DNA of 64,000 nucleotides from Phaeosaccion multiseriatum. Lineage: Eukaryota > Protista > Ochrophyta, other classes. Within the stretch, counting starts at the first letter, position 1. Every line of letters begins with the position of its first letter. The stretch lies in assembly GCA_965112735.1 (NCBI GenBank), contig OZ218954.1:372001-436000 (forward strand), in the 5' to 3' direction. Below the pieces are notes generated by a model. That model did not search any database and was not told where the DNA came from. It was given only the letters and a program-made list of their open reading frames with translations. Made by a program: the position numbers and the translations under genes. Shown piece after piece: positions 1,247 through 19,325 of the stretch.

Positions 1247-1931
1247 GGGGCAGGAGCAGCTGTAGCACCTGCAGACTCTGCTGCTGCAGAGGGTGGTGTC
1301 GCTCTCGGGGGGCGGAGGTGAGAGAACCCGCGAGACAGAGCTACGGAAGAGGAGGGAGGCCGAGAAAAGGAGAAGAACAGAGGCAGGCGCGGAGGGGAGG
1401 GAGAGGGCAAAGCTCCAGAAAAGGGCAGCGCGGCAAAGGGAAAGGGAAAGGTTACAGCAGGCTAAGCAGGGCCCTTCAGGGTGACTCTTACCTTTCTGTG
1501 TACGTAGTAATGGAAATAGTAATGGAAGAAGGGGAGGAGCGAGCAGCACCGAGGAGGAGGAGGAGGAGGAGAAGGAGGAGGAGGAGGAGGAGGAGGAAGA
1601 GGAGGAGGAGGAGGAGGAGGAGCTGCAGCAGCAGCACCAGCAGCAGCACCAGCAGCAGCTGCAGCCGCGCACTGTGGCCGGCAACGGGAGAAAAAAAGAA
1701 GCGAGAGGAAGGCGCGAATAAACAGTTTCAGTTTCCTTTTTTTCGTTTTTTTTTTAAACTTGTCGTCACTGGACTATTATCATTACGAGCGCTCCACCTC
1801 TAATAAAGGAAGGCAAGAGCCCCCGCCTTATGCAGCGACGTGGATTGCGATTGGTAGTGTCCCATTACTTGCACAAGGTGCCTCTGTTTGGCTGCTGAAC
1901 GGCGAGCGTGGCTGAGTGAGGCCCAGCATGC

Positions 1932-2556
1932 ATGATCTGGCGCAAAAGGGATAATCCGATAATCCAGAAGGAGGACGCGGACAAGGAGGAGGGGCTCACG
2001 GGCAACTGCGAGCTCAATGCCGACGAGGTGAGAGGAGAGAGAAGAGGCACACCGGCTTACGTATCATCGGGCATCTCTGCCTCTCCTTTTCAACCAACCA
2101 CCAATGCTCAGTGCTTCTCTGATCTCTTTTGTGGGCCGGTTGTGGCTCTGACTGTGGCGGCGCTAACGATTGGCTGTGATGTGTGGCTGCTTCCTGTTGC
2201 TTGCTGTCCTGTCCTCTTCTGTGCAAACAGCTTGGTTGGCGCACGTTTGCATGGATCATATAATGCAAACAGACAGTGGGCCTTGTTTCCGGCCGGCCTT
2301 TCTGCTGGCAAGCACAAACTGGAGCTTGCCGGCGTCGTGGACAAGGGGGGTGTGGCCTTTATGCGCAAGCGGTACAGCGTCTGCCGTCGCAAATATTACC
2401 ACGATGCAGAGCATGATCGCCGAGCAGCAGGGAGGAGGAGGAGGCATGTGGCTGCAATTTCATGCCGGGGCCGGGCATGGGAGGCCCCACAGGAGTGCCC
2501 CCCCCCCTGGGATGGGCCCACCGCGGGCATGATGATAACTTTCCCTTTCCCGCCAG
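1932..2556 (+). CDS. Two predicted exons (1932-2027, 2277-2556) of unknown function; possibly the 5' exons of the downstream deaminase-Fanzor gene
   Basis: Phase-0 GT at 2028 matches the acceptor before 2277. The phase-1 donor GTGAGT at 2557 is compatible with phase-1 acceptors before 3251 or 3257. An exon-like segment at 2908-3086 does not fit this phase. Confidence 0.3.
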
Positions 2557-3258
2557 GTGAGTGAGTGCGTGAGTGAGTGCGTGAGTGAGTGAGTGAGTGA
2601 GTGAGTGACGGAGGGAGGGAGGGAGGGCGTGAGCGAGGGAGGGAGTGAATGAGAGACTGAGAGAGGGAGTGAGTGAGTGAGGGAGTGCGTGAATGAGTGG
2701 GTGAATGAGTGGGTGAATGAGTGAGCGAGTGAGTGGGTGAATGAGTGGGTGACCAACACGGAAGAGCGGGCGGTCGCAGAAGAGGAGAGAAGGGAAGAGA
2801 AGGGCGGATGGAAGGAGGCTGATCCTTCACTCCTTCGCCCGCCTTTTGTCTCTTTTGTCCCCTCCCATGTCCCCCTCTCACTCCTTTTGCTTGCTCTGGC
2901 GAGGCAGCATTTGGGTGTTCCTGCCGAACCTTTTTGGCCTGAAATTGAGTTTCAGCTCATGAGGGGAAAAGAAATCTTTAGAACCCTATTACACTCAGCT
3001 GCCTGGGAGCTGCGGGGAGTGAAAAAACAGGCTATGGCCCGGGTGCTGGCACCCTCCCTTCAGCAGCAGCACTCCTACGAAGAGAGGTGAGCGAGAGGTT
3101 TGAGAGGTTGGGTAGGAGGAAAAGAGGGATGAGTAGCGGCCCGGGCAGGAGGAACAACAACTAGTAGCTACGCAACACCCTCTCTCCCGTTTGCGTCATT
3201 CTCCCCAACGACAAACTTACCCCTCCTGTGTGCTGTGGCACCTGCCTCAGTAACAGCC

Positions 3259-4824
3259 ATGAACGGCGCAAGAGAGGAGAGAGAACTCAAGGCATGGAAA
3301 CGTGCCTTCGGAGTCCTCCAGGCATGCGAACCATCCTTCCGACTCATCCTTTCATGGCCTGAAGCCTACGAGGCAGCTGCCGGACTCTGCCACGAACTTT
3401 TTCCACACAAAGCAGACCTTTGTGTGGAGGGCCAGGCTCACGCGCAAACGAGAATAAGGTGAGGAGCGAGAATGGGACAAAGAGAGGGCGGGGGGAGAGA
3501 GTGGTGAGAGCAGCAGCACACACTGGACACGCATCTCTGCTGCGCAGGGGAGAAGGGGAAAGAAGACTTGAACTGCACTCTCTTGTTTCCCTTCCTGCCT
3601 GCGTGTTCGGGAAAGGGAAACTTGCCTCTCATCCCCTCTGCCTACCCTCTCGCCCCGCTGTGCTTTGGCAGCTGCCTCAGTGACAACACGTACGGCCTAA
3701 GAGAGGGAGAGAGGATGGGACAGGAGGCTTCCTCCGAACTGTTTGCCAGGTGGAGTTCATTGTTCGGCGAACTCTTCGACTCATATATGATCCACATCGT
3801 GCACCTCCAGTTAGCCAAACCCAAGTTGTTGGGTTTGGCAGGTGTGCTACGCTCCAACGAACCATGTCAGGAAAAGGTGAGTAGTGAGTGTGTTTCTTTC
3901 TTCGTGTGAAAGGGGGGGCTTTTCTTGGTAGGGGAAGAAAGGGAGGAGAGGGGAGCGAGTCTTCCCTAGTGAGAGGGACTTCAGGGGGGAGAGAGAGAGA
4001 GAGTGAGCGGAGGGGGGGGGAGGGGCAACGCGGAAGGAGGAAAGTAAGGTAGTGAATGAGAGGCTGGGCCCTGATTCATGTATAATCCGTGGAGAGGAAG
4101 GTCCATCTCGTCCCGAGTTTGAGCAGTGAGGGAGGGAGGGGAAGGGATGGGATGGGACTTCTGTCGCCAGCTGTGACAGAAACGGACCTCCATCCATCTC
4201 TCTCACATCATTTCTTCCACATTTGCCCTTGCTCCCTCGTTTTGTCCTCCTTCTCGCAACAAAACCACTCACCTGTATGTCCCACTCACTCTTTGCTTTC
4301 GTGCCTCGTCTGTCCTTTCGTCTTTGGTCCGGCGCAGCACTTGGACTCGCGGTTGGACTTGGACTTGGACCCAAACCGAGCAGGAGGGGCAGCGGCACCC
4401 GCGGCCAACAGCAGTAGCAGAGCGATTGGTAGCATTGGAAGCCTCGGAGGTATCGGCAGTCTCAGCGGTTCAACGGATAGTCTGAGTCAAGAGCAGGCTG
4501 GAGTGGGTATGGGCAGTGACGGTGGTGGTGGTGGTGGAGGAGGTTGTGGTGGTGGGGGAAGGGGGCGAAGAAGAGGAGGAGGGGGGGGGAGGGGGCGAGG
4601 AAGAGCAGGAGGAGGAGGAGGAGGAGGAGGAGGAGGAGGAGGAGGAGGAGGAGGAGGAGGAGGAGCCACGCCCAGCGATGGCTCCGCGTCAGGCTCTCCG
4701 TCTGGACCGCCGGGTGAGGACAAAGGAGGGTGGATATTTGTATCGTACGGAGGACGAAAGCACCGGCATGGAGCAAAGCCAGGCAGAGGGCCGGAGGGGC
4801 TGCCACAGACCGCCACAGGAGGAG

Positions 4825-4866
<42 letters not shown>

Positions 4867-7800
4867 GAGGAGGAGGGGGGAGACAAACTTCTGGCGAGAG
4901 CTCACAGCCCGTCAGAGTCTCCGCATCGAGGAAAAGAGCCCGCGGAGCAGCAGCAGGGGCAGCAGCAGCAGGAGGAGGAGGAGGAGGAGGAGGAGGAGGA
5001 GGAGGAGGAGGAGGAGGAGGAGGAGGAGGAGGAGGAGGAGGAGGAGGAGGAGGAGGAGGAGGAGGAGGAGGAGGGAGGGGACAGGCGCATTCGGACTGCC
5101 CATATCATCCTCTTCCTCAGCTATGGGAGTGGATCCCCGTAGAAGCAGGAGGAGGAAGAGGAGGAGGAGGAGGAGGAGGAGGAGGAGGAGGAGGAGGACG
5201 AGGACGAGGAGGAGGAGGACGAGGACGAGGAGGACGAGGACGAGGAGGAGGAGGAGGAGGAGGACGAGGACGAGGAGGAGGAGGACGAGGACGAGGAGGA
5301 GGAGGAGGAGGACGACGACGACGAGGAGGAGGAGGAGGAGGAGGACAAGGACGAGGACGAGGAGGAGGAGGAGGAGGAGGAGGAGGAGGAGGAGGAGGAG
5401 GGGGGAGACAAACTTCTGGCGAGAGCTCACAGCACGTCAGAGTCTCCGCATCGAGGAAAAGAGCCCGCGGAGCAGCAGCAGGGGCAGCAGCAGCAGGAGG
5501 AGGAGGGGGAGGAGGGGGAGGAGGAGGAGGAGGAGGAGGAGGAGGAGGAGGAGGAGGACGAAGGGGAGGAGGAGGAGGAGGAGAGGGAGGAGGAGGAGGA
5601 GGAGGAGAAGGAGGAGGAGGAGCAGGAGGAGCAGGAGGAGCAGGCGGAGGAGGCGGAGGAGGCGGAGGAGGAGGAAGAGGAGCAGGAGCAGGAGCAGGAG
5701 GAAGAGGAGGAGGAGGCGGAGGAGGAGGAGGAGGAGGAGGAGGAGGACGAGGAGGAGGAGGAGGAGGACGAGGAGGAGGAGGACGAGGAGCAGGAGGAGG
5801 AGGAGGAAGAGGACGAGGACGAAGACAAGCCTCTGGCGAGAGGTCACCGACCCCTCCGAGAAAAAGATCTCGAGGAGGAGGAGGAGGAGGAGGAGGAGGA
5901 GGAGGAGGAGGAGGAGGAGGAGGAGGAGGAGGAGGAGGAGGAGGAGGAGGAGGAGGAGGAGGAGGAGGAGGAGGAGGAGGAGGAGGAGGAGGAGAAGGAG
6001 GAGGAGGAGAAGGAGGAGGAAGAGGCGGAGGAGGAAGAGGAGCAGGAGCAGGAGCAGGAGGAGGAGGAAGAGGAGGAGGACGAGGAGGAGGAGGAGGAGG
6101 AGGAGGAGGAGGAGGAGGAGGAGGAGGAGGAGGAGGAGGACGAAGACAAGCCTCTGGCGAGAGGTCACCGACCCCTCCGAGAAAAAGATCTCGAGGAGCA
6201 GCAGCAGCAGCAGCAGCAGGAGGAGGAGGAGGAGGAAGAGATGATGGCAGCAGTGACGAGGACTGCTCTGACACTGAGCTGCAGGGGGAGCGAGGCACGG
6301 CGACGGCGAGTCCGAAGGTGAGGAGAGCTTTGGCTGGGGGGCAAAGACGAGGCACGCAAGCTTGCTTCTGTTTCCCTCAAATAGTTGGTTAATTTTTTTG
6401 TGCTTGCTTTCATCGCCCCCCTCGGTCTCCCCAACAACAGGAGCCCACTCGCCGATCCAAGAGGGCAAGGAAGCCCAAGGCTTGGTCCAGCGATTACGAA
6501 TCGACCAATGACGAGGAGTGCAAGAGAAAGCAGAGAGGCAGGGGTGGACAGGGCAGCAAGAAGGTGAGAGGCCTTGGCCTTGCCAGTATCACACTGACTG
6601 GCTGGCTGACTGTGAGCGAGCGTGTGGCTGCGTCCTCCCTGCCTTGCTCGGACCCTTCTAACACCCCTCTCTTCTTGACCCCTTGCTCCCGGTCGTGTAT
6701 ATACTGCCTCATCATGTGCGTCTTAACAGAAGGGGGAGGAGGACAAGGCAGAGGGGCAGAAGGCAGCTGTGTCGAGGGTAGTCCAGTCCTTCCAGAACGT
6801 AGTGCCAAACTTCGTTGTGGACGTGGCCCGGCGTTGTCGTCCCTCAGGAGCACGGGCGGAGACGAGGAAAAGGCAGCAGGTCCATGCTCAAGAAGACAGG
6901 GCCAGCTTGACTTTCCAATCGGCAGACGCCGGGGGTAAGGTGCAGCTCTTGCGCAACAATTTCAGGTCATGGTGGCGGGCTGAGGAGCGAAACGCTTGCT
7001 ATTTTTTGCCATTGATCGGCAAGCTCCGAGCCTTTGTGGTCGATCGTCCCACGGTCCTTGGTAGTGAGCAAGCGGTCATGATTACGGCGGTGCTCGAGGA
7101 GCAGAAGAGGGATGACCACACCGACTCCCAGCAGCAGCAGCAGCAGCAGCAGCAACAGCAACAGCAGCAGCAGCAGCAAGAACACCACTCTTCGGGGAGA
7201 AGCAGTCGTGTAAAGTTCCGCATCTTCCTGATCGGAGACCTCACGGTGCGGGGCGTGGAGCAAGAGGGGGGAGAGGCGCCCATCACTCTGAAGGATATAA
7301 AGTTTCCGGTGGGGGGAGAGCGGGAGGAAAACTTTTCTTGTCTGGGTAAGCAGGAGGCGCCAAAGGCTGCAGCGGCCTTGCTCCAGCGCCTCAAACGGTC
7401 GGACGATTGCCTCGCCCTTGTCGTTAGACGGGAAAGTGGTGAGGGGGAGAAGAAGGGCCATTGCAGGGGTACGCTCCTGTTCAGCGCCCTCCACTTGCCC
7501 ATCGAAGACGTGCACCGGCTCAATGCAGTGGCACCCGCCGCCATCACGAAAGGGGGGCCGACTGTGGCGCCGAAAGGGGGGCCGACTGTGGCGCCTGGCA
7601 AGCATTCTGTGAGCCAATTGGCGGATACATGTACGACCATCGCCGTAGCCGGGAAGCCCGACCTCGTGCCCAAGCTCAAGCAGTTGGCTGCGAAAGTGTT
7701 TGAGAAAGCGGTGGAGCGAGGAAAGGCAGGGGGTGAGCGGTTCGGAGCGATTGCTGCCGGCCTGCTCAACACGGACACCGGCGCTATACTCGTGTCTGGC

Positions 7801-9486
7801 AGGCAGGGGCCGTGTAGAGCTCACCCCCAATCGGGTCTCCATGGCATCACCGAGGATGGTGCTCATGCTGAGCCAGATGTCATTTCCAGGGCACTGCGGC
7901 GGGATGACTGGCATTGCAAGCAGGCGCTCGTGCTGGTTGTGTCCACAGCCCCATGTTATGCGTGCGCCAGATTCATTGTGCAAATTGTGACGGAGGGTAA
8001 GCTGAACATCACCCACGTCATTGCCGGAGAGGCTGAAGCCGTCGTTCGACTGGATGGAGTCGACAAACTGAGGGAGACCAACATTCAGGTAGGTAGGGTA
8101 GTGAGAGAGAGACCCTCGCTCAGCCCACCTCCGCTGCCTTTCTCGCCCTCCAACTCACTCTCCTCCTGTGCTGTGGACTGACGCATGTACATGTGTGTGT
8201 GTGTGTGTGAAATGCAGGTGCTTAGAGACGAGGTGTTTTGTGCTAATCTCCTGCCCCGGTACACAGCGACGGCTATCCCCGACACCACCATATCGGCTCA
8301 CTATGCGGCCGGGGAGGCAGATTGGCGCAGCTCCGCCGAGCTTCCTCTTCTGCTCTTCTCTAGTCCGGAGTGGCAGGAAGGGGGGGCAGGCGAGAGGCAT
8401 CTCGAGGGGCCTCTCCGACGCTCGATGCTTCTCGCTCTGGCGGCGGTCGGCATGAATGCAAGAAGAAGCTGGACAGACATGGGCCGAGAGAAGCAAAAGC
8501 GGCTGCGACAGGCAGCGATGAGAGAGGGGGGGCGTGGCGCAGGCTCAGTGCCTCCGCTGTTGCTTGTGGGCTCGGATCTTATGCAGGTCCTGCTGTCAGA
8601 GAAGCAGGGCGGCGGAGAGGGCGGCGCGTCGGAGGGGAGGAGGAATGAAGACGCTGGCGCTGCTGCTGTGAGAGATGCGGCGAGTCAGTCCCTCCCCCTC
8701 CTCAACAGCAATGACGATGTCGTCGGAGGCTTCCAGCCTTGGTTCGACGCCGATCCCGATGTCAGTGCAGGGGTGGTATGTCTTCGACCGTGGGGGCTTC
8801 GTCTGCGGGAGGGACGGCCTGTTCCAGCTTCTTTGGTCCAAGGGGATCTGACACCCCCAAAGCAGGTAGAACTCAAGCTAGAGCAGAGGAGAGAGAAGAA
8901 GACGAAACACTTCTCAAGGCTGGAGCGCAGAACCGAAGAGCAGCGGTGGAAGGACGCGTGCAAGCGAGCTTCCTTCGGCCTTTTCGCTGGAGACCCACGA
9001 AAGGCTGGAGAGAAGGACTTGGCCGGCGCGCAGCGGACTCTCGACGGAGCTCATAAGAGGGGGAAGAGGATGACGGGGGGTCCTGCTTCAGATGATGCGG
9101 AGGAGAAGAAGAAGAAGAAGGAGGAGGAGGAGGAGGAGGAGGAGGAGGAGGAGGAGGAGGAGGAGGAGGAGGAGGAGGAGGAGGAGGAGGAGGAGGAGGA
9201 GGAGAAGCAGGAGGAGAAGGAGGAGGAGAAGGAGGAAGAAGCGACCTTCCGCGTGAGGGCCGCGAGCATCAAACTCCAGCCCAGCGCAAGTGTGCAGCGT
9301 GTGATCGAGCAGGGGCTTCATTCCAGGGGGCTGGCCGATAAGATTATGAATCGCACGGCACTTCTGGCGGCCGTGCTACCCCTCCTACCTCGTTTTGTTT
9401 TGGAGGAGGGAGAGAGGGGCATGAGCAGCACGGGCGAGGAGGAGGGAGAGATGGAAGGGCCGGCTCCCTCCCCTACTAGCGACGCT

Positions 9487-9519
<33 letters not shown>

Positions 9520-12500
9520 CAGCAGCAGCAGGAGGAGAAGAAGAAGGGCCCACCGAGCGACATTTGCAACGACTGGAGGAAGCTGAGAGACGTTTTGTGG
9601 GCCTGGAGTCGGGCTCATGAGGCGGCCGGTGAGGAGGACACTGTTGATGATGCCGAGACTCTCATCCAGTGTGTGCGCGACGTTCTACTCAAACGTGATC
9701 CCTCGCTCCTCACCTCCATGGTGAAGGGGACTATCGTGGGCAAGGCGAAGCTCGCTGCCTTCCTCCCTGCTTTTCGGAGAATGGAGAAGCTTTTGGGTCT
9801 CGTGCGCAATGACGAGCTGCCGGAGGGCCAGAAGCGGGGGTTTACCATACACCCCGGTCAAACCTCCTACAGAGAACTTCTCGATCGATTCGAGACGTGC
9901 TTGGGTGTTTTGACGTCAGCCAGGTGCACCGACAGCACCCGACAGCAGGAGCTCACAGCATGGGCATTGGAGTGCGTGGGAAAGGATGGAGACAAGAAGG
10001 TCATTCCCCACTCTTCAAAGCGGGGCAAGGGGAGGGGGAAGAAGAAGAAGAAGAAGAAGAAGAGCAAGCAGAAGGAGATAGAAGGGGCGCAACAGGCTGG
10101 GCGCACAAAACGAATGCGGGCGGGCTCTAGAAAGACACACGCTCAAGTCCAGGAGGAGCGGCTGAAGAAATGTGAGAAGCTTGGCACCGAAGTGTGGAAG
10201 AGCAGCGTGCGTGCTGTGTGGGGCGACATCGACGCCTTGTTGAGGAGGATACTGGCCCCGCTCTTCGCCCACGACAAGGAGTTTATGGGCCGAGAGGACA
10301 AAGTTGTAGGGGAGTTGAAGGAGCTTCTCGAGTCCGCATCCGAGGAGAACATGGCATGGGCAACACTATTCGGATCAGAGTCGGCGAAGGGGCCAGGGAA
10401 GGAGGGGGAGAAGTTCCATCGCGACTTTGCCGGGAAGCTATTCTCCCTGCTCATCTCGGGACGGTATGAACGCTGCAAGCTGGTAAGTCTCCAGTACAGA
10501 AGGGGTCAAAACATGCAGCGCCTTGCAGCTGAGCTACAGCTGTATGTGTGTGTGTGTGTGTGTGTGCGTGTGCGTGCGTGCGTGTGTGTGTGTGTGCGTG
10601 CGTGCGTGCGTGTGTGTGTGTGCGCGTGCGTACGTGTGTGTGTGCGTGCGTGCGTGAGTGAATGAGTGCGTGCGTGCGTGCGTGTGTGCGTGCGTGTGTG
10701 TGTGTCTGTCTGTCTGTCTGTGTGTGTGCGTGCGTGCGTGTGTGTGTGTGCGTGTGTGTGTGTGTGCGTGTGTGTGTGCGTGTGTGTGTGCGTGTGCGTG
10801 TGTGTGTGTGTGCGTGTGTGTGTGTGTGTGCGTGTGTGTATGCGTGTGTGAGTGAGTGCGTGTGTGTGTGTGCGTGCGTGTTTGTGTGTGCGCGTGTGCG
10901 TGCATGTGTGTGTGTGTGTGCGTGCGTGCGTGTGTGAGTGCGGGCGTGCGTGCGTGCGGGCGTGCGTGCGTGCGTGCGTGCGTACGTGCGTGCGTGCGTG
11001 CGTGCGTGCGTGTGTGTGCGTGTGTGTGTGTGCGTGCGTGCGTGTGTGAGTGCGGGCGTGTGTGCGTGCGTGCGTGCGTGCGTGTGTGAGGGAGTGAGGG
11101 AGTGGGTTTCTGTGAGAGTGAGTGAGAGTGCGTGAGTGCGCGAGTGCGTGCTTGCATGCGTGGGTGCGTGCGTGCGTGAGGGAGTGAGGGGTTCTTTCCT
11201 TGCTCCTCCAAAAGCTCATTGCCTGTCTTCCCTTCTTGTCTCCACCCCGACCCATCTGTCCCGCACGCACACACACACACGCACACACACACGCAGGTGC
11301 AAGGGGGGCTCAGTGAGTTGGCGGCGCTGCACCTTGCGCAGGCCGAGATTGTTCTGTCCTTGACGGATCACTTTACGCGCAAGGTTGGCGCAGTGGGGAG
11401 TGAGGAGCGTCGCGGCAAGCAGGGAGGAGCCAAGCTGCCCGACAGAAGAATCTTGCTCGCCGATGTTGCCGCCCAGCTCAAGAAGATGGAGGCCTTGAAA
11501 GACCTCCATAGGGTTAAGGGTGACGCAGAGACACTGGGCCGAGATTTTGTGCAGTTCATAGTGCCGACCACTGAGTTTGCTGCAGACCCCAAAAGGAGTG
11601 ACGAGAAGATTACAGCTGCAGCTGCAAAGGTGGCGTTGCAGGCGGCTTTCGCTGCGGGTGCCTACGTTGAAGCTTCCAGCAGAAGAATGGACAGGTCAAC
11701 CTGGGTGGCAGCGGCGGCCTCTGGGGCAGCTGCCTTTTATTTTTCTCGTCTACAAGGATACCACCCCAGCGCCGAGGACAGGAAACTGGCGATGGCCATG
11801 GGGCGGTTGCTGGCACAGAAGCTTGAGACAGCTTCTTCTGATGCCTTCAAACCAACACCCTTCTCCAACGAGGAGACGACGGAGGACGAGGGAGAGAGTC
11901 GGGCGACGTGGCTCAAAAGAGCGGAAGAGGTGATGCGAGGAAGCGAGAGTCGGCCCATGCAGCCCGTGTTCCAGGCGTTGTTTCTTGTGACACTCTACAG
12001 GGAGTGGTACTCGAAGGGAACGCTCAAGGCTGACGATGAGAACCTTTCTCGCCTGGTGCTTCAGGCCCTGGCACGCACGGAACCGAGCGGGCCGAGCGGA
12101 CAATCCCCCGAGTGGACAGCGTTTCTTTGGGCTGCCCTTTATCAGCACTTGCGGCAGACCTACGGCCTTCCGAGGATCAAGAAGCAGAGGCTGGGCAGTA
12201 TGAAGCCCGCCAGCCTTGTCCAGGAGGCGAGGGAGATGGCGAGCAAGATGGTGCACGAGGAGGGAGAGGAGAGGAGTGAGGAGGGGAAGAAGGAGGCAGA
12301 GAAAGCAGCGTCGTCAAAAGCGGCAAGAGCGGCCTTGAGGTACTCACAGAAGTCTTTGGCGCACGAGCTGGGGGCTCAGCAGACCAACAGCGGACAGGTG
12401 CGCTACCGTGCAGCACGAGAGACGAGGAGGGAGGGGCAGGAGGAGGACTTCAAGGTGCGCAGCAGCTGTGAGTACCTGGAGGTGAGCTCAGAGTCCGACC

Positions 12501-14641
12501 CCAACAAGGAGCTGGCGACATCAGAGTGCAGGCTCTCTTATAGGAAGACAGCGCCGCACTCCCCGGACCGGTATGTAGACAAGGTGATCGTCAAGCTGCC
12601 TACCGACAAGTGCGAGTTCGTTCTGTTGGACCTGACGAAGGTCCAGGACCAACGCAAGCTGCTGCGGCTGCCGGGCATGGGGCGGGCAGCAGGGGGGAGC
12701 CGAGGGGTGGAGCCGAGATGGGTGGCCGTGCGGGCAGATACGCTGAATGGCGAGCCTGTTCCCGGCACCATTCGGCTCGAGGTTATCTTTAGAGACTATG
12801 GCCAACCTCCGCCACCGCCTGCTGTTGGGGTGCAAGAAGGAATCGTGCCAAGGCTAGTCGACTTCCGCCCACCAGGGTTCAAGGAGGAGAGGGCCTGCTG
12901 CGCGCCCGAGGTGAAGGTGACGAGGGAGAAGGTGACGAGGGAGAAGGGGAGGGACAAGCTTGTAGCTCTCCGAGTTGAACACTCCGAGAAGGCCCGCTCT
13001 CTGCCGAAGGTGCCGAAAACGAAGACTCAGCGGAGGAAGAGCGCAGAGGCTGCCGCTCTCCGCAAGAGAATTCGCGACGCGGACCAGGCGAGGGCGAAGG
13101 CGTATGGTGGAGGGCACCGCAAGTGGCGCCCATTACGGGAAGGTGACTTGTCTCGCAGGGCCGGGCTGGGGCCGAATACCCATTCCGTGCAAGTGCTTGA
13201 TGTCATGGAGGGCTGTTCCGCAGAGGATGCCACGAGCCTACGCGAGTACTTGGAGAAGCTCACTCCCTGTCAGCGCTGGGGCGGGGCGGATCCGGGGGTT
13301 CGCTCTTTCCTCCATATCTACGACATGGGGAATAACCGCGTGTATCGGGTTGGGCACAAGTTCTCTGCTAACGTGCGGAAGGTGCAGAAGAAAATCGCCC
13401 GCCTGGACGGGGCCATACACGAGGCGAGAGAGGTAAGCAAGGAGCTTAGTAGCGAAAGGCAAGGCAGGGGAAAACTGACAGCTCACTCGCTCCGCTCAGC
13501 CATGGGAGGAGGCCTCCCCTCCGCCCCTCCTCTCTTGCCCCTACTCTTGACTTGTTCCCTGGCTGCTGACTGAATCGGCCGCTCCCGCCCTCCTCTCCCT
13601 CTCCCTTGCTAGGTCGGCGACACTGCCATCCTCAAGGCGCTGTGCTCTGAGCAAGCCAAGATACGCCAGCGTTTGAAGCACCATACTTTGGTGCTTCACA
13701 CAATCGCCATCAGGCTCATCACAGCGACTTTTACCCACTTTGTGTTGCCCCCGGTTGACGCCAAAGCGTGGGCGAGCCGGAAAGGCCGCTTGAGAGCGGG
13801 TCTGCCCAGGGACATGGGGAAGGACATGGCGGCTCTATCCTTCGGAAAATTTCGACAGCGGCTTCGATTGGTGAGTGCTGGCTGGACAGGAGTTAGGGGA
13901 AGGGAATAGGGAGCCCAAAGCTGTATACGAGGAGGCGACTGCCCTCGCTCCGCCTTGCTTGCCTCTTACTAGGCCTACTTGCTGCTCCTTTGCCTCTGCC
14001 TCCTCTCGCTCGTCCTCCTCCCTCACCAGGCGGCATCGTCTCCATCCTGCCCTCTGACGACCCTCTGTGAGCCCAGCGAAGCCTACACCACCAAAACGTG
14101 TGGCTCTTGCGGGGCTTACAACGAGGCCGTCGGCGGCAAGAAGCAGTGGGTATGCCCCACTTGCCACCAGATGCTACTCCGCGACCCCTCAGCCGCCCGG
14201 ACCATCACTCTGTTGGGGTTGCAGGAGTTCGCAAGGGGCGTGCTTCCATCCTCGTCCGTGCTGAAGCCACAAGCGAAGGCACGGACACACCAAACCTCCC
14301 CAGTACGTCGTGTTGGAAGAAGGCATAAGCAAGTCGCCCGCCCTGCCGAGCACCTGCGTTCTTGTTCTTGTTTGTGTCTGCCTGCAACAATACCCTTCCC
14401 CCCCTTCCCTTCAGCTTTTCTTCTTCACTTGCTCTTGCCTGGGCCGCTTTTCTTGCTTTGCTTTCTTGACTTGTTGCCCTGCCTCACTACCTCGCCTGCC
14501 TGCCTGCCTGGCCTCGCTCCGCCCTCTCGCTCGTCCTGCTGTTGCTTTGCTAGTCGGGGCCACCTGCCGGGGGAGCAGCCGGAGGGCTTGCCCAAGAGGC
14601 TGTACAGGCTACTTCGCGATCGGAGCGTAGTCTGTAGGTGA
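3259..14641 (+). CDS. Giant spliced protein (~3,000 aa): Gly/Arg-rich region + zinc-dependent deaminase + enlarged Fanzor2/IS607-TnpB-like RNA-guided RuvC nuclease
   Basis: Predicted exons 3259-3458, 3672-3876, 4338-6317, 6441-6563, 6730-8088, 8218-10482, 11297-13432, 13613-13870, 14030-14641. Every junction is GT..AG with matching phase (first phase 2, rest phase 0) and the joined frame has no stops. Motifs: HAE..PCYAC, RAASIKLQP, GADPGVRSF, VLPP, EAYTTKTCGSC, CPTC, RDPSAARTI. The true start and the C-terminal end are uncertain. Confidence 0.7.
4520..6240 (+). repeat. (GGA/GGC/CGA)n coding low-complexity tract encoding poly-Gly/RG/RGG with two duplicated basic motifs
   Basis: Long GGA runs. 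RQTSGESSQxVRVSASRKRARG occurs at ~4880 and ~5405; RRQASGERSPTPPRKRSRG at ~5820 and ~6140. Confidence 0.9.
7690..8235 (+). other. Cytidine/dCMP/TadA/RibD-superfamily zinc-dependent deaminase domain
   Basis: GAIAAGLLNTDTGAILVSG...HAE (H 7864-7866, E 7870-7872)...LVLVVSTAPCYAC (C 7954, C 7963)ARFIVQ...ITHVIAG...GVDKLRETNIQ|VL follows the HxE...PCxxC fold pattern from the first strand to the terminal helix/strand. Confidence 0.85.
10543..11293. repeat. Compound (GT/GTGC)n microsatellite in a Fanzor-gene intron, with a short (CA)n tract just before the acceptor
   Basis: Read directly; lies within predicted intron 10483-11296. Confidence 0.9.
13280..14210 (+). other. TnpB/Fanzor RuvC + C4 zinc-finger module split by two introns
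   Basis: RuvC-I GADPGVRSFLHIYD (D 13289). Bridge helix and KIRQRLKHHTLVLHTIA. FVLPPVD has Pro at the canonical RuvC-II Glu position. MAALSFGKFRQRL, then the relocated Glu in SEAYTTKTC (E 14078), CGSC...CPTC, and RuvC-III RDPSAARTI (D 14183). Confidence 0.9.
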
Positions 14642-14889
14642 GATGGCTGCTGCCTGCTGCTCGCTCCCCTGCACCCCCAGCCACGCCAAAGTCATGAACT
14701 CTTTCCTAACAACCTGCCCCTCTCCCCGCCCGCCCCCCCCCCCGCCCCTCCGCCCCTGCCCTCTGATTGCTTCCTGCCTCCTGCCTCGGCGATTGCTTTT
14801 GCTTCCCGCGATATCTTCCCGCCTCCCGCTCCCGCAATCTCCCGCCTTTGCCAAAAAATTCCAAATTTCGTTTTCTTCTCCCTTTTTCG

Positions 14890-15050
14890 GGCCGGCGGTC
14901 GACGGTATAAAAATGCGCCCAGATCCTGACACGCTATCGCCCACTTTCTCGATAGCGGATAGCACACCCCCACCCCTCGACACCCCCCCCCCCCCAAAGC
15001 CGGCTGGCGCCGGCGATAGCGGATAGCGGATAGCGCGTCAGGGGTCGACT
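14890..15050 (+). ncRNA. Structured segment downstream of the Fanzor ORF; candidate omegaRNA or element end
   Basis: Hairpin CGCTATCG(14932-14939)/CGATAGCG(14950-14957). Long-range inverted repeat CCTGACACGCTATC(14925-14938)/GATAGCGCGTCAGG(15029-15042). GCCGGC-TGGC-GCCGGC hairpin at 14999-15014. Function is inferred from position only. Confidence 0.25.
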
Positions 15051-15958
15051 CTCTCACTCTTTCCTCTCGAAGGCAGAGCGAAGTAAGGCTGTTGAGCTAT
15101 CAAGAGAGTGTTGATTTATCGATAATCTAGAAAATAAAAAAATAAAAAAATAGAAAAGCAAGGTTGGGCCGACCGCGTGTGCTTCTTACGAGCGCACGAA
15201 GGGACCTCAGGAGTGCATTCGCCAAAGGGAGTCTAAAGGCTACCCAACCTAAAACGGAAACTCCCCGAGTGGAGTGCGTCGTGTGAGATATAACGATGCT
15301 GCGGCGCATGTGGAGCTTCCCTTGCTTTGATTGCTTCCCTCGGTGCTGTCTCCTGGCTGATGCACCTCCGCCGGCTCCTTTCCGTGGGACATTCCTACTG
15401 CCTCCTCGTGCACCTCCATGGCCTCCTCTGCCTCTGGAGGGACTGCGCCAAGCCACACCCGAGAATGGAGGGGATTTTATTGACTTACAGGAATCAACCT
15501 AAGACTTACGTATGCAAGGAGGGCTGCTGCTCATGGACCGGATTTGGCCCTTGATGAAGTCAACAACAAGCGGGTGCTGTATACAGCAGGGCTGTCGGCA
15601 GTTTGCAGTTCGCAGTTCATGCAACCTTATCAAAATTGAACACCAAAATGGAATCGACATTCCGGCCTGATGAGGGGGGGCGTGGGTGCGTGCGTGCCCG
15701 GCCCAATCCGATTGTCCCGTAACGGTTTTTCTGAAAATGCATCGCATAGCGCCGGATCGCCTGATTTCAATAGCGCCGGATCGCCTGATTCCTCTGCATC
15801 ATCGCGACGAAGCTCCACTCGAGAAGGCTCCCACTTCCACTTGTGCAGCTCCCACTCCTGCTTGCGCCACGCCTCCTGCATCTTCTATAACTAATTGGAG
15901 AAGGGTTACACTAGGACAGCTTGAAGGTCTTCCCTCAGCCACGCTTCATCCACCTCCA

Positions 15959-18900
15959 ATGGCCATTGTGATTTTTCAGGATGGCAGCGAGGAGACTCTG
16001 TCAATAGGGGAGACGTTAGAGGATACCTTGTCTCCCATCTTTCGTGAGCGATACACTCCAAATGGTGAGTGAGGTATCGATCATGGCTGGTCCTAAGTGC
16101 TTGCTGGTTTGTTAGGACCTGCTCGGTTGACCCGCACCTAATCTGGCGATCTTTCCTCTGATGTCGCTGCACCCCATGATGAAGGCGCGGTGGTGAAGTT
16201 ATGGGTGGCGTTTGGAGGCTTATCAGGTGAGGAGTGCAAGAATAAATTTTTGCGTTTCGAACCATGAGCAACGGAGGTATCAGCCCAGCAGCCCCGTTCA
16301 GCGCTATGTCCGCCCCCCTACTGGTTAAGCACTTCTTCTGCCTATCTGTGTTGCCGAATCTCCCGCTCTCCTCCCCCCCCAACAGGCCCCATTCCCTCCG
16401 AGCTCGGGAATCTCCATAGCCTCACGTACCTAGACCTTTCCACCAACCACCAGCTGTCGGGTGAGTGCATGGGGGGGTCGAGTTGTGTCCGAGGAGACGG
16501 GTGTGCATCCCTGCTGCTCTTGAGCAATGCCCTGAGCTGTGGCGGGGAGGCCTCCAACGAGCTGCATGCATGACGAGCGATGACTCACTCTATGTACTGC
16601 TCCTGCCGAATGCCCCTCTTCTTCCCCCTGACAGGCCCCATTCCCTCCGAGCTCGGGAATCTCCGTAGCCTCACGGAACTATACCTTTCCAGCAACCAGC
16701 TGTCGGGTGAGTGCATGCGGGGGTCGAGTTGTGTCCGGGGAGACGGGTGTGCATCCCTGCTGCTCTTGAGCAATGCCCTGAGCTGTGGCGGGGAGGCCTC
16801 CAACGAGCTGCATGCATGACGATGACTCACTCTATTGACTGCTTCTGCCTGGGCTGCCGAATGTCCCCCTCCCCCCCCAACAGGCTCCATTCCCTCCGAG
16901 CTCGGGAATCTCCATAGCCTCACGAAACTAGACCTTTCCTGCAACCAGCTGTCGGGTGAGTGCATGCGGGGGTCGAGTTGTGTCCGAGGAGACGGGTGTG
17001 CATCCCTGCTGCTCTTGAGCAATGCCCTGAGCTGTGGCGGGGAGGCCTCCAACGAGCTGCATGCATGACGAGCGATGACTCACTCTATGTACTGCTCCTG
17101 CCGAATGCCCCTCTTCTTCCCCCTGACAGGCCCCATTCCCTCCGAGCTCGGGAATCTCCGTAGCCTCACGGAACTATACCTTTCCAGCAACCAGCTGTCG
17201 GGTGAGTGCATGCGGGGGTCGAGTTGTGTCCGAGGAGACGGGTGTGCATACCTGCTGCTCTTCAGCCATGCCCTGAGCTGTGGCGGGGAGGCCTCCAACG
17301 AGCTGCATGCATGAGGATGTCTCACTCTATTTACTGCTTTCCTGCCGAATGTCCCCCTCCCCCCCCAACAGGCTCCATTCCCTCCGAGCTCGGGAATCTC
17401 CATAGCCTCACGATGCTATTTCTTTCCAACAACCAGCTGTCGGGTGAGTGCATGCGGGGGTCGAGTTGTGTCCGGGGAGACGGGTGTGCATCCCTGCTGC
17501 TCTTGAGCAATGCCCTGAGCTGTGGCGGGGAGGCCTCCAACGAGCTGCATGCATGACGATGACTCACTCTATTGACTGCTTCTGCCTGGGCTGCCGAATG
17601 TCCCCCTCCCCCCCCAACAGGCCCCATTCCCTCCGAGCTCGGGAATCTCCATAGCCTCACGAAACTAGACCTTTCCTGCAACCAGCTGTCGGGTGAGTGC
17701 ATGCGGGGGTCGAGTTGTGTCCGAGGAGACGGGTGTGCATCCCTGCTGCTCTTGAGCAATGCCCTGAGCTGTGGCGGGGAGGCCTCCAACGAGCTGCATG
17801 CATGACGAGCGATGACTCACTCTATGTACTGCTCTCCTGCCGAATGTCCCCCTCCCCCCCCAACAGGCTCCATTCCCTCCGAGCTCGGGAATCTCCATAG
17901 CCTCACGATGCTATTTCTTTCCAACAACCAGCTGTCGGGTGAGTGCATGCGGGGGTCGAGTTGTGTCCGGGGAGACGGGTGTGCATCCCTGCTGCTCTTG
18001 AGCAATGCCCTGAGCTGTGGCGGGGAGGCCTCCAACGAGCTGCATGCATGAGGATGTCTCACTCTATTTACTGCTCTCCTGCCGAATGTCCCCCTCCCCC
18101 CCCAACAGGCTCCATTCCCTCCGAGCTCGGGAATCTCCATAGCCTCACGTACCTAGACCTTTCCACCAACCACCAGCTGTCGGGTGAGTGCATGGGGGGG
18201 TCGAGTTGTGTCCGAGGAGACGGGTGTGCATCCCTGCTGCTCTGCAGCCATGCCCTGACTGAGCTGTGGCGGGGAGGCCTCTAACGAACCTGCACGCATA
18301 ACGATGAGTCATCCTCCCGCCCCCTCCCTCTTCCCCCCCTCCCTCGCTCAGACAACCCTGGAAATCTTTACGGTCGTGGGGGGTCCTGGGCCGCTGACGC
18401 CGTGAAGCGTTGGCAGGCACAGATCGCCCCTCCTCCACCCCCCCCTCGACCGCAGCCCGCTGCAAGAGCAGCAGCAGCAACAGGAGTAAATGGTGTCAGG
18501 ACGAGCAGTGGCGCCGCGAGTCCCCTGTCTGCGTGGCTGAGAGACAAGTGCGGCTTTGACAACCCCGACAAGCTGGCCAAGGACCTTGCCGGTGTGGGCG
18601 TCGACATGGGCGTGGTCCGCTTCTCGGAGCAGGAGGACCTGGAGGAGGCCATTGCCAGTCTCACGTGGGCCCCCATCCGCAAGAAGGCCTTCCTCAGAGC
18701 GTGCAAGGCCGGGAGGAACGAGCAGGGATCGGAGTGCCTGAACAAGGCCTTCCATGACTTCACAGTACACAACAAATCTGCGGCAGGGGAAGCAGCGGCA
18801 GCTGCTGGCGTCGGGCCACTGCGTGGACCGTCGTTGGTGCGAATGTGCAGTGACCCACGGCACCCCCCCACCGACTTCACACACGAGCAGTGGGTTTCCA

Positions 18901-19325
18901 CGCGAGATGCTCTATACCAGTACAAGGGCAGCACGGACTCGAAGCATAATCAGGCGCATTGGGTGGCTAAGCACATGAATATGATGCAGGAGAATTACTT
19001 ATCCAGCATCAGCCAGGTGGGGGGCTGCGGTCGCAAACTCGCGGAAGCCGCGGCCATGTGCCACTTGGGGGTGGGCAGACCCCCACCCAAGCCCGGGAGA
19101 CCCGTCAACAGTACTAAGCACAGCGACTGCATGAGCCTTGGCGAGATGATCAGCAAGATGCTTCGCGAAGTGCCCGCCGTGACCACCAAGACATCCTTCA
19201 CGGTGCTGCGGGAGTTCGGCAACGATGAGTCGCATCACAACGCGTGGCGGAAACAGTATGACAGGAAGATTGACTTCGTGCATGCTGCATACGCCGTCGC
19301 CAGTGAGATTCTACACTTGATCTGA
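15959..19325 (+). CDS. LRR (8 single-repeat exons) - SAM-like - DUF4145/HEPN-like protein
   Basis: First exon 15959-16064 (phase 1). LRR exons 16386-16460, 16635-16706, 16884-16955, 17130-17201, 17372-17443, 17621-17692, 17867-17938, 18109-18183, each encoding G[PS]IPSELGNL[HR]SLTxLxLSxN(H)QLS. Last exon 18352-19325 is in phase and contains LSAWLRDKCG...EDLEE...RKKAFLRAC and RKLAE...SLGEMI...LREFGNDESH. Confidence 0.85.
16350..18300 (+). repeat. Tandem array of eight 242-249 bp exon+intron cassettes
   Basis: Exon starts are spaced 249, 249, 246, 242, 249, 246 and 242 bp apart. Intron 5' portions are nearly identical. Confidence 0.95.

What the first reader, a model, noticed from the sequence alone, without database searches (positions are those of the whole stretch)
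6730..14641. Candidate natural deaminase-Fanzor fusion: a base-editor-like RNA-guided protein hidden by introns
Seen in sequence: five ORFs that look unrelated in the six-frame track join without stops through canonical, all phase-0 introns. These are 8089-8217 (CAG|GTAGGT..TGCAG|GTG), 10483-11296 (CTG|GTAAGT..CGCAG|GTG), 13433-13612 (GAG|GTAAGC..GCTAG|GTC) and 13871-14029 (TTG|GTGAGT..ACCAG|GCG). The joined protein carries an intact HAE...PCYAC deaminase zinc site, a linker with a poly-Glu tract, and a full TnpB/Fanzor core ending in DPG / EAYTTKTCxxC / CxxC / RD. Established: HxE-PCxxC defines the cytidine/adenosine deaminase superfamily, and TnpB/Fanzor proteins are omegaRNA-guided DNA endonucleases that open an R-loop with a displaced ssDNA strand, the substrate exploited by engineered base editors. 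Inference: this could be a natural RNA-guided deaminase/nuclease that mutagenises or edits its targets (viruses, transposons or the host). I know of no described Fanzor with this architecture but cannot exclude one.
Basis: partly seen in the sequence, partly recalled or inferred. Interest (0 to 1): 0.95.

Follow-up and report, generated by a model that had tools for sequence, protein, structure and literature searches.

The report
Transcribed, spliced deaminase-Fanzor fusion gene
A gene in this GC-rich eukaryote, transcribed and spliced in public reads, joins a zinc deaminase domain to a Fanzor-type (TnpB-like) DNA-cutting module in one reading frame; this is the layout of a laboratory base editor and I found no natural example in the literature, but whether the two parts act together is untested.

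Summary
Five ORFs join through four GT..AG phase-0 introns into one 2196-codon frame (6769-14641, first ATG at 7078).

The N-terminal part passes Pfam's threshold for a zinc deaminase (28 bits against a cut-off of 25) and keeps the HAE and PCxxC motifs.

The C-terminal 205 residues are a Fanzor2/IS607-TnpB RuvC plus zinc-finger module. A family profile scores 96.6 bits (E 7e-32), in one alignment that runs unbroken across the last two joins. All invariant family residues are kept, including the Fanzor-type relocated glutamate.

One public run of the same organism (X24) behaves as RNA. Its contigs lack introns 1, 2 and 3, so the join that links the deaminase half to the nuclease half is made in transcripts.

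Limits:
- No WED/REC guide-binding region can be recognised.
- Both structure predictions failed.
- The 1400-residue linker evolves as if neutral.
- One DNA run carries a stop at codon 681.
- No guide RNA, transposon ends or orthologues outside this genome were found.

The scan had already found this architecture on other DNA of the same genome (s1-333998, frameshifted copy; s1-331311). This copy is intact and adds the transcript evidence. I rate the single-gene architecture at about 0.85 and guided base editing at about 0.2.

The parts
6769..8088 (+). Exon 1 of the model (aa 1-440). The first in-frame ATG is at 7078 and there is an upstream in-frame stop at 6724, so the true 5' end is unknown.
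   Evidence: An X24 RNA-like contig (record 25) reaches back to about 7567.
7654..8088 (+). Zinc deaminase domain (aa 296-440; the last strand continues into exon 2). HAE at 7864-7872 and PCYAC at 7951-7965, with 26 residues between the Glu of HAE and the Pro of PCYAC.
   Evidence: Pfam dCMP_cyt_deam_1: 28 bits against a cut-off of 25, E 2.2e-6, profile positions 9-94 of 102. Nine other deaminase-clan families give sub-threshold hits on the same core. 58 of the 100 nearest Atlas clusters are deaminases (a lead only).
8089..8217 (+). Intron 1 (129 nt, GTAGGT..TGCAG), removed in run X24.
   Evidence: X24 record 25 has depth 82.5. Bin 7950-8149 reads 56.9, which equals 138/200 x 82.5. Bin 8150-8349 reads 54.9, which equals 133/200 x 82.5. 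So 8089-8216 is uncovered, and the record carries 522 nt upstream of 8217.
8218..10482 (+). Exon 2 (aa 441-1195): the end of the deaminase fold followed by a low-complexity linker, with poly-Glu at 9099-9236, poly-Gln at 9487-9531 and poly-Lys at 10039-10062.
   Evidence: Coding periodicity. No Pfam domain.
10483..11296 (+). Intron 2 (814 nt, GTAAGT..CGCAG, mostly a GT/GC microsatellite). This is the join that links the deaminase half to the nuclease half, and it is removed in run X24.
   Evidence: X24 record 28 is 554 nt, which equals 165 nt (10318-10482) plus 389 nt (11297-11685). X24 depth is 92.6 both at 10404 and at 11451. Bin 10350-10549 reads 62.5, which equals 135/200 x 92.6. Bin 10150-10349 reads 179.2, which equals 198/200 x 166.1 plus 32/200 x 92.6.
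11297..13432 (+). Exon 3 (aa 1196-1907): 660 residues with no detectable relatives, then RuvC-I (D1860 at 13289-13291).
   Evidence: There were no hits in 1.84 billion representative proteins. RuvC-I aligns to the family profile. X24 shows no difference from the window between 12278 and 13430.
13433..13612 (+). Intron 3 (180 nt, GTAAGC..GCTAG), removed in run X24.
   Evidence: One search lists the joint 13430->13611 as 'skips 180, GT..AG (cut +2)' in X24 record 30. X24 depth over the intron is zero by the bin arithmetic.
13613..13870 (+). Exon 4 (aa 1908-1993): the middle of RuvC. The canonical RuvC-II glutamate position is a proline (P1953, 13748-13750).
   Evidence: HMM alignment. Proline at this position is the Fanzor/TnpB2 state described in PMC10530073.
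13871..14029 (+). Intron 4 (159 nt, GTGAGT..ACCAG), supported by homology only.
   Evidence: The profile alignment and about 30 uninterrupted tblastn alignments to intronless relatives run across aa 1993/1994. The reads did not cover this join.
14030..14229 (+). Exon 5, conserved part. It holds the relocated catalytic Glu (E2010, 14078-14080), zinc-finger cysteines C2017/C2020 (14099-14110) and C2035/C2038 (14153-14164), and RuvC-III R2044-D2045 (14180-14185).
   Evidence: Pfam Cas12f1-like_TNB scores 30.5 bits against a cut-off of 26.3. PDB hits are UnCas12m4a at 1.3e-7 and mimivirus TnpB-like L79 at 2.4e-4. NCBIfam gives IS607_TnpB at 1.2e-4. Invariant columns are kept.
14230..14641 (+). Open-frame tail of 137 codons without codon periodicity. 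It is probably 3' UTR, non-coding RNA or a further unrecognised intron.
   Evidence: GC1/2/3 is 0.61/0.61/0.58. Relatives end about 10-20 residues after RuvC-III.
14030..14310 (+). Strongly structured RNA stretch overlapping the 3' end of the conserved ORF. It is a candidate guide-RNA scaffold and a lead only.
   Evidence: MFE is -120 kcal/mol against -98.5 +/- 5.3 for 200 shuffles, z -4.06. It was the strongest of 30 sliding windows. There was no Rfam match.

Best explanation
SHOWN: 6769-14641 is one transcribed, spliced gene. Its reading frame carries an N-terminal helix-4-type zinc deaminase domain with all catalytic and zinc ligands. This is followed by about 1400 residues of fast-evolving, largely low-complexity sequence. 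The C-terminus is a Fanzor2/IS607-TnpB-type RuvC plus zinc-finger nuclease module with an intact D-E-D site of the relocated-glutamate kind. FROM EARLIER NOTES, NOT TESTED HERE: it belongs to a small repeated family in this genome that is thought to be transposon-borne. INFERRED: the C-terminal module, together with the unrecognisable 660 residues before it, acts like other Fanzors. It would bind a guide RNA transcribed from the 3' end of the gene, open an R-loop at matching DNA and cut it. The deaminase, tethered by the long flexible linker, would be carried to that site, where it can deaminate exposed single-stranded DNA. The result would be local mutagenesis or uracil marking of targets such as empty donor sites, rival elements or invading DNA. 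Rough odds: single-gene architecture 0.85, nuclease module catalytically competent 0.6, guide-directed deamination 0.2-0.25. The overall confidence given (0.4) is for the statement as a whole, mechanism included.
For: The frame joins mechanically with canonical phase-0 introns. Codon periodicity runs through all of exons 1-4 and is absent from the introns. The deaminase passes Pfam's cut-off (28 against 25 bits) over profile positions 9-94 of 102, with HAE and PCxxC intact. The domain is cut by intron 1 at profile position 94 of 102, so it needs exon 2 to be complete. A profile of 76 Fanzor2/IS607-TnpB relatives matches aa 1855-2059 at 96.6 bits, E 6.8e-32, unbroken across joins 3 and 4. About 30 intronless metagenome relatives align over aa 1860-2057, the best at 7e-21. 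All ten invariant family columns and the near-invariant relocated Glu are kept. Proline sits at the canonical RuvC-II position with a Glu 57 residues later, as described for active Fanzors (PMC10530073). Run X24, a different sample of the same organism, lacks introns 1, 2 and 3 in its contigs. Its depth is similar (about 80-100) on both sides of intron 2 (with the arithmetic given under parts). Between X24 and the window there are 13 differences in about 2660 nt of exons 1-3 but none in the 1360 nt from 12278 to 13817. At the upstream rate about 6.6 would be expected there, P about 0.001, which suggests constraint on the nuclease end. A structured RNA stretch lies where Fanzor guide RNAs usually start.
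Against: No WED/REC homology was found: the family N-terminal profile scores aa 1560-1856 at -2.4 bits, the same as shuffles, and hhalign finds only RuvC-I. Guide binding is therefore unsupported. Both AlphaFold runs failed (pLDDT 31.6 and 36.9), so neither fold is confirmed. Of the 13 differences in the linker, 11 are non-synonymous, which is compatible with no constraint. DNA run X21 has a stop at codon 681 (8938 G>T). X24 has no contigs over 9089-9550, so no chain of contigs spans the whole gene, and contigs are not single molecules. The near-invariant Asn after RuvC-III is Thr here. No inverted terminal repeats or transposase were found near this copy. No relative with this fusion was found outside this genome. 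A 1400-residue linker is unlike any engineered editor.
Confidence: 0.4

Rival explanations
1. The fusion protein is real, but its modules work independently. It would be a mobile-element multi-domain accessory protein. The Fanzor part serves element maintenance or homing. The deaminase does something unguided, for example acting on nucleotide pools, on single-stranded transposition intermediates or on host factors, or it is released by processing.
For: The linker is about 1400 residues and appears unconstrained. Earlier notes on this genome describe deaminase domains inside other giant multi-domain genes with OTU, Ulp1 and Nudix-like parts in transposon-rich regions (untested). The best Pfam family is the general dCMP/cytidine deaminase family, and PHROGs hits are to dCMP deaminases.
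Against: Physical tethering would concentrate any deaminase activity wherever the nuclease module binds. Secondary Pfam hits lean towards nucleic-acid deaminases (MafB19, SNAD4, APOBEC-like), though all are below threshold. No protease domain or cleavage site was found in this copy.
Confidence: 0.3
2. It is a decaying element gene. It is still transcribed and spliced, but the protein has no function any longer, and the open frame is a young relic.
For: The non-synonymous to synonymous count is 11:2 in the linker. DNA run X21 carries a nonsense variant at codon 681. An earlier follow-up found another copy frameshifted (s1-333998). The WED/REC half is unrecognisable. The ORF tail lacks coding signal.
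Against: A frame of 2196 codons across five exons is intact, and every catalytic and zinc-binding residue of both domains is kept. There are no differences between samples over the last 1360 nt examined, against about 0.5% upstream. The only indel seen between samples is in frame, a net 33 nt.
Confidence: 0.2
3. There are two neighbouring genes, a deaminase gene and a Fanzor gene, that are joined only in occasional read-through transcripts. The main products are separate proteins.
For: X24 has no contigs between 9089 and 9550, so an internal end or start cannot be excluded there. Exon 3 has an in-frame ATG at its codon 62 that could start a nuclease-only protein.
Against: There is no stop codon between the deaminase and the nuclease in the spliced frame. 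The contig across 10482/11297 has the same depth as its neighbours, about 92. Coding periodicity is continuous. Earlier notes report the same arrangement at other loci of the genome (untested here).
Confidence: 0.08

Closest known systems
Fanzor2 / IS607-type TnpB of giant viruses and eukaryotes (for example mimivirus L79 = ApmFanzor, PDB 9b0l; the IS607-like element on viral contig L003)
   Same: The RuvC-I Asp, proline at the canonical RuvC-II site with a relocated Glu, the CxxC..CxxC zinc finger and the RuvC-III Arg-Asp are all shared. The profile match is 96.6 bits. The reference element L003 has a MerR-resolvase TnpA next to the nuclease gene, which is the IS607 type.
   Different: This protein is three to five times longer. 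It has introns inside the nuclease, no recognisable WED/REC or HTH_OrfB_IS605 region, no adjacent serine recombinase, Thr in place of the near-invariant Asn after RuvC-III, and an N-terminal deaminase. None of the 75 closest family proteins or the 50 fetched loci carries a deaminase.
Engineered base editors (deaminase fused to Cas9, Cas12f, TnpB or IscB)
   Same: Both put a zinc deaminase and an RNA-guided RuvC-family protein on one polypeptide.
   Different: This fusion is natural. The nuclease site looks active rather than dead or nicking. The linker is about 1400 residues rather than tens. No guide RNA or activity is known. The comparison is a working analogy only.
Helix-4 zinc deaminases of the CDA superfamily (TadA, dCMP deaminase, MafB19 toxins, AID/APOBEC-like)
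   Same: HAE and PCxxC are present with the same 26-residue spacing as I recall for E. coli TadA (from memory, not tested). The predicted strand-helix order ends in helix 4 and strand 5. The Pfam threshold is passed.
   Different: There is no close relative by sequence: no hits in two large protein searches or in a metagenome scan. PDB matches to TadA and APOBEC2 reach only E 0.2-0.4. The substrate class cannot be assigned.
Paralogous deaminase-Fanzor loci of the same genome noted earlier in this scan (s1-333998, s1-331311, s1-357164)
   Same: They have the same reported architecture, and one reported RuvC-III variant, RDPCAARTI, is close to RDPSAARTI here.
   Different: I could not read those loci. 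One is reported as frameshifted and without transcript data. This copy is intact, and reads of a public run show its splicing.

Membership tests
CDA-superfamily zinc deaminase (Pfam dCMP_cyt_deam_1, clan CDA) | H[AC]E and PCxxC zinc/catalytic motifs in the right order and spacing | tested here: met
   HAE at aa 366-368 and PCYAC at aa 395-399, with 26 residues between the Glu and the Pro.
CDA-superfamily zinc deaminase (Pfam dCMP_cyt_deam_1, clan CDA) | Profile score above the curated family threshold | tested here: met
   28 bits against a cut-off of 25, E 2.2e-6, profile positions 9-94 of 102 on the trimmed domain. The whole exon scores 25.0, exactly at the cut-off of 25.
CDA-superfamily zinc deaminase (Pfam dCMP_cyt_deam_1, clan CDA) | Deaminase fold (five-stranded sheet with the two zinc-binding helices) | tested here: inconclusive
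   The single-sequence AlphaFold model has pLDDT 31.6 and is unusable. No homologues were available for an alignment.
CDA-superfamily zinc deaminase (Pfam dCMP_cyt_deam_1, clan CDA) | Deaminase activity and substrate (free nucleotide, tRNA, ssDNA) | not testable with these tools
   This needs a biochemical assay.
Fanzor / TnpB RNA-guided nuclease | Split RuvC domain with catalytic Asp-Glu-Asp | tested here: met
   D1860, E2010 and D2045 align to the invariant or near-invariant family columns. The profile scores 96.6 bits, E 6.8e-32.
Fanzor / TnpB RNA-guided nuclease | Fanzor/TnpB2-type rearranged site: an inert residue at the canonical RuvC-II Glu and an alternative Glu about 45 residues downstream | tested here: met
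   P1953 sits at the canonical position and E2010 lies 57 residues later, just before the zinc finger. The definition comes from PMC10530073 section 11.
Fanzor / TnpB RNA-guided nuclease | Zinc-finger (TNB) insertion, CxxC..CxxC, between RuvC-II and RuvC-III | tested here: met
   Pfam Cas12f1-like_TNB scores 30.5 bits against a cut-off of 26.3. The four cysteines align to invariant columns.
Fanzor / TnpB RNA-guided nuclease | N-terminal WED and REC domains (Pfam HTH_OrfB_IS605 region) that hold the guide RNA and the heteroduplex | tested here: not met
   There is no Pfam or NCBIfam hit in exon 3. hhalign finds only RuvC-I. The family N-terminal profile scores -2.4 bits, the same as shuffles. 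The AlphaFold model is unusable. A diverged or replaced domain cannot be excluded.
Fanzor / TnpB RNA-guided nuclease | Guide (omega/f) RNA encoded at or beyond the 3' end of the gene | tested here: inconclusive
   There is a structured stretch at 14030-14310, z -4.06, but no Rfam match, no relatives for covariation and no small-RNA data.
Fanzor / TnpB RNA-guided nuclease | Eukaryotic nuclear gene (introns, NLS-like tracts) | tested here: met
   Introns 1-3 are absent from the RNA-like contigs. Lys-rich tracts lie at aa 737-741 and 1048-1055. The neighbours are host genes, a PPR-SMR gene and a P-type ATPase.
Fanzor / TnpB RNA-guided nuclease | Residence in a transposon (terminal repeats, or a partner transposase such as IS607 TnpA) | tested here: not met
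   No inverted repeat was found between 1-7000 and 14000-30000 apart from simple repeats. No transposase domain was found in the large ORFs of the window. Earlier notes report ends around other copies; I did not test this.

The most novel reading that the evidence does not exclude
A natural RNA-guided base editor or mutator. The Fanzor module would use a locus-encoded guide RNA to open an R-loop at matching DNA, and the tethered deaminase would convert bases on the displaced strand. This would give a eukaryotic mobile element, or its host, a programmable point-mutation or uracil-marking system. It could be a guided analogue of repeat-induced point mutation or of APOBEC restriction.
Probability: 0.2. 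Interest if true: 0.97.

Novelty: new variant of a known kind. Interest (0 to 1): 0.8.

Why it matters
Fanzors are the only known eukaryotic RNA-guided DNA nucleases, and their biological role is still unclear. All deaminase-nuclease fusions described so far are laboratory constructs. A transcribed natural gene with both modules intact would show that evolution has tried this combination. It would make the question of what Fanzors do in eukaryotes directly testable through a mutational read-out. It could also supply a new deaminase and a new nuclease scaffold. Even if the domains act independently, this is a new Fanzor architecture: very large, intron-rich, and with the guide-binding half replaced or diverged beyond recognition.

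Tried and rejected
1. Protein searches with the start of exon 3, the deaminase domain and the whole of exon 3 against 1.84 billion representatives gave no hits. The genome's proteins are not in those collections. In hindsight the deaminase query was too short to catch exon-sized ORFs.
2. A metagenome scan with the deaminase found no relative.
3. Single-sequence AlphaFold failed for the deaminase and for the last 320 residues of exon 3, with pLDDT 31.6 and 36.9, so I ran no fold search.
4. PDB sequence searches with the RuvC-I region and with exon 4 gave only chance hits.
5. In the search for WED/REC, hhalign produced colinear weak motif matches. I rejected them after a shuffle test showed no signal.
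6. In the search for terminal inverted repeats I found only GGA/CCT simple-repeat pairs, and nothing after low-complexity filtering.
7. Rfam returned only microsatellite-driven microRNA look-alikes below threshold.
8. The Atlas search on aa 140-300 gave scores of about 0.55, which is meaningless.
9. Upstream ORFs (1-6900) contain no OTU, Ulp1 or other domain, unlike what earlier notes report for another copy.
10. There is no second copy of the gene in this window.
11. The RNA-run search returned only runs sharing 5-7% of words, which is low-complexity matching. The informative run X24 was listed as 'DNA?'.

Full report
**1. The observation**

The five ORFs are at the stated coordinates. All four introns begin GT, end AG and are phase 0, and each holds 1-7 in-frame stops, so the frame exists only after splicing.

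| Motif | Residues | Window coordinates |
|---|---|---|
| HAE | aa 366-368 | 7864-7872 |
| PCYAC | aa 395-399 | 7951-7965 |
| DPG | aa 1860-1862 | 13289-13297 |
| SEAYTTKTC-GSC | aa 2009-2020 | 14075-14110 |
| CPTC | aa 2035-2038 | 14153-14164 |
| RD | aa 2044-2045 | 14180-14185 |

GC content by codon position is about 0.65/0.45/0.70 in every 150-codon block of exons 1-4, the 'linker' included, and flat in the introns. So the whole stretch is coding in this frame.

Two corrections are needed. There is no in-frame ATG before 7078, and a stop lies at 6724, so the 5' end is open. The last 137 codons (14230-14641) have no codon periodicity and are probably not real coding sequence.

**2. The deaminase end**

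Exon 1 hits Pfam dCMP_cyt_deam_1 exactly at its cut-off (25 bits). The trimmed domain (7654-8088) scores 28 bits, E 2.2e-6, over profile positions 9-94 of 102. Nine further families of the deaminase clan (MafB19, SNAD4, APOBEC2, OTT_1508, NAD1, Bd3614, APOBEC1 and others) match the same core below threshold.

The profile is cut off at position 94 of 102 by intron 1, so the final strand must come from exon 2. The Atlas feature search agrees: 58 of the 100 nearest clusters are deaminases, at a score of 0.87, which is a lead only. PDB matches to APOBEC2 and TadA are not significant (E 0.2-0.4). The fold could not be confirmed because the single-sequence AlphaFold model was unusable (pLDDT 31.6) and no homologues could be gathered for an alignment. 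My reading is a genuine CDA-superfamily domain of the helix-4 type with all ligands intact and an unknown substrate.

**3. The nuclease end**

- Exon 5 passes Pfam's cut-off for the Cas12f1-like TNB zinc finger (30.5 against 26.3 bits).
- It matches the C-termini of UnCas12m4a (1.3e-7), mimivirus TnpB-like L79 (2.4e-4), LaTranC and ISDra2 TnpB in the PDB.
- In NCBIfam it scores best on IS607_TnpB.

A scan of viral contigs gave three relatives. One of them, L003 on a 255-kb viral contig, is an IS607-type pair of a MerR-resolvase TnpA and a TnpB-like gene. That is Fanzor2 in the sense of Bao and Jurka (PMC3627910).

I built a profile from L003 and 75 of its homologues. It aligns to aa 1855-2059 of the spliced protein at 96.6 bits, E 6.8e-32, covering profile positions 378-570, which is the whole RuvC plus zinc finger. 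The alignment is a single stretch that crosses the exon 3/4 and exon 4/5 joins. About 30 of 47 intronless metagenome relatives align over aa 1860-2057 in a single uninterrupted tblastn segment, the best at 7e-21.

All ten invariant family columns are kept: the Asp and Gly of DPG, Thr-Cys, three further Cys, and Arg-Asp. So is the near-invariant Glu (correct numbering). The canonical RuvC-II glutamate position is a proline and the Glu lies 57 residues later. This is the arrangement that Jiang et al. showed to be the active site of Fanzors (PMC10530073 section 11). The near-invariant Asn after RuvC-III is Thr here.

**4. What is missing**

The 660 residues of exon 3 before RuvC-I have no relatives in 1.84 billion representative proteins and no Pfam, NCBIfam, PHROGs or PADLOC domain. 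hhalign against the family recognises only RuvC-I. A permissive hhalign run gave colinear weak motif matches. However, a profile of the family's WED/REC half scores the real sequence at -2.4 bits, the same as 1000 shuffles. The AlphaFold model was unusable (pLDDT 36.9). So the guide-binding half of a Fanzor is not demonstrable here. 'A full TnpB/Fanzor core' is an overstatement.

**5. One gene or two**

No run labelled as RNA holds the locus; the RNA-labelled runs share only 5-7% of words, which is low-complexity matching. Runs X19, X21 and X23 come from one sample and X24 from another sample of the same organism, and all hold the locus. X24 is listed as 'DNA?' but behaves as RNA.

- **Intron 3.** Record 30 of X24 skips 13430->13611, reported as 180 nt with GT..AG ends, which is exactly intron 3. 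The bin depths over the intron equal what the exon parts alone would give.
- **Intron 1.** Record 25 (1395 nt, depth 82.5) lies on 8217-9088 and has 522 more letters upstream. Bins 7950-8149 and 8150-8349 read 56.9 and 54.9, which correspond to 138 and 133 covered bases. So 8089-8216 is uncovered and the contig piece ends at 8088.
- **Intron 2, the join that matters.** Record 28 is 554 nt, which equals 165 nt (10318-10482) plus 389 nt (11297-11685). X24's depth is 92.6 both at 10404 and at 11451. Bin 10350-10549 reads 62.5, or 135 bases at 92.6; that is coverage ending at 10484, as expected because exon 3 also begins with GT. Bin 10150-10349 reads 179.2, which is 198 bases at 166.1 plus 32 bases at 92.6. 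The implied start at 10318 overlaps the previous contig by 30 bases, a length I take to be k-1 for an assumed assembler word size of 31.

The DNA runs keep the introns: X23 record 23 runs through intron 3. X24 depth is about 80-100 on both sides of intron 2.

Three limits remain:
- The tool dropped the two joints at masked repeats, so introns 1 and 2 rest on arithmetic rather than on a listed joint.
- X24 has no contigs over 9089-9550 (poly-Glu and poly-Gln).
- Contigs are not single molecules.

I put the single-gene reading at about 0.85.

**6. Variation**

X24 differs from the window at 13 sites, all between aa 433 and 1492, and 11 of them are non-synonymous. There is also one in-frame indel, with 38 nt replaced by 5. 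There are no differences in the 1360 nt from 12278 to 13817, where about 6.6 would be expected at the upstream rate (P about 0.001). The linker therefore looks unconstrained while the nuclease end looks constrained. DNA run X21 has 8938 G>T, a stop at codon 681, which X19 of the same sample lacks. It could be an allele, a paralogue or an error. If real, it would uncouple the two domains in that allele.

**7. Context**

The neighbours are ordinary host genes: an LRR array, a P-type ATPase and a PPR-SMR gene. I found no transposase and no terminal inverted repeats, no upstream OTU or Ulp1 domains and no second copy in the window.

Earlier notes of this scan report the same architecture at other loci of this genome. 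They include two follow-ups: s1-333998 (a 14-kb transposon, frameshifted, with no transcript data) and s1-331311 (a repeated mobile-element gene, last join not shown). I could not read those loci. DNA depth is 3-4 times higher at 11350-11550, with at least four contigs carrying a variant at 11451. That fits a few diverged paralogues sharing one conserved segment.

**8. Guide RNA**

The stretch 14030-14310 folds far better than shuffles (z -4.06) and was the strongest of 30 windows. It lies at the 3' end of the conserved ORF, where Fanzor guide RNAs start, and it is followed by the non-coding-looking ORF tail. There is no Rfam match and there are no relatives for covariation. This is a lead only.

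**9. Literature**

Full-text searches for Fanzor or TnpB together with deaminase returned only engineered editors. The founding paper and the three large Fanzor surveys do not mention a deaminase or any fused catalytic domain, and a further search found none. Green-algal genomes are known to carry Fanzor elements (PMC12633428).

**10. Verdict**

It is a new architecture of a known kind of system. The base-editor mechanism remains an inference at about 0.2. The main rivals are independent action of the modules in an element-encoded giant protein (0.3) and a decaying but still expressed gene (0.2).

Noticed in passing
window 8938: DNA run X21, from the assembly's own sample, has G>T here, which turns codon 681 (Glu) into a stop. 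Run X19 of the same sample and the RNA-like run X24 have G. It could be a segregating nonsense allele, a paralogue or an error.
   Followed up: partly
window 12240-12277: In run X24, 38 nt are replaced by 5 nt (TGCAC), a net in-frame loss of 11 codons in the exon 3 linker.
   Followed up: no
window 11350-11550: Summed contig depth in the DNA runs is 3-4 times that of the flanks, and at least four contigs carry 11451 T>C. The RNA-like run shows no excess. This is a short multi-copy segment at the start of exon 3, probably shared with paralogues.
   Followed up: no
window 13452: Run X23 has an 18-nt insertion inside intron 3, and a cluster of differences at 13893-13906 inside intron 4. The introns vary more than the flanking nuclease exons.
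   Followed up: no
window 4970-6140: An (AGG)n array of about 388 units keeps a 767-codon Gly/Arg-rich ORF open (4089-6392) just upstream of the gene. It is unclear whether it is a gene, upstream exons or simple repeat.
   Followed up: no
window 16370-18311: There is a tandem array of 246/495-bp units (7.8/3.9 copies, 89-92% matches) that encodes LRR-like exon cassettes with their introns. Other first-stage findings already noted it.
   Followed up: no
window 39604-40905 (-): A clear PPR-SMR protein (PPR_2 E 2e-73 and an Smr domain). Together with a P-type ATPase fragment at 28267-29757 (-), this shows that the neighbourhood consists of ordinary host genes of a probably plastid-bearing eukaryote.
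   Followed up: partly
L003 2368-4165: A 255-kb viral contig carries an IS607-type pair: a MerR-resolvase TnpA overlapping a 597-codon TnpB/Fanzor2 ORF. It was the closest full-length relative of the nuclease module that I could fetch.
   Followed up: yes
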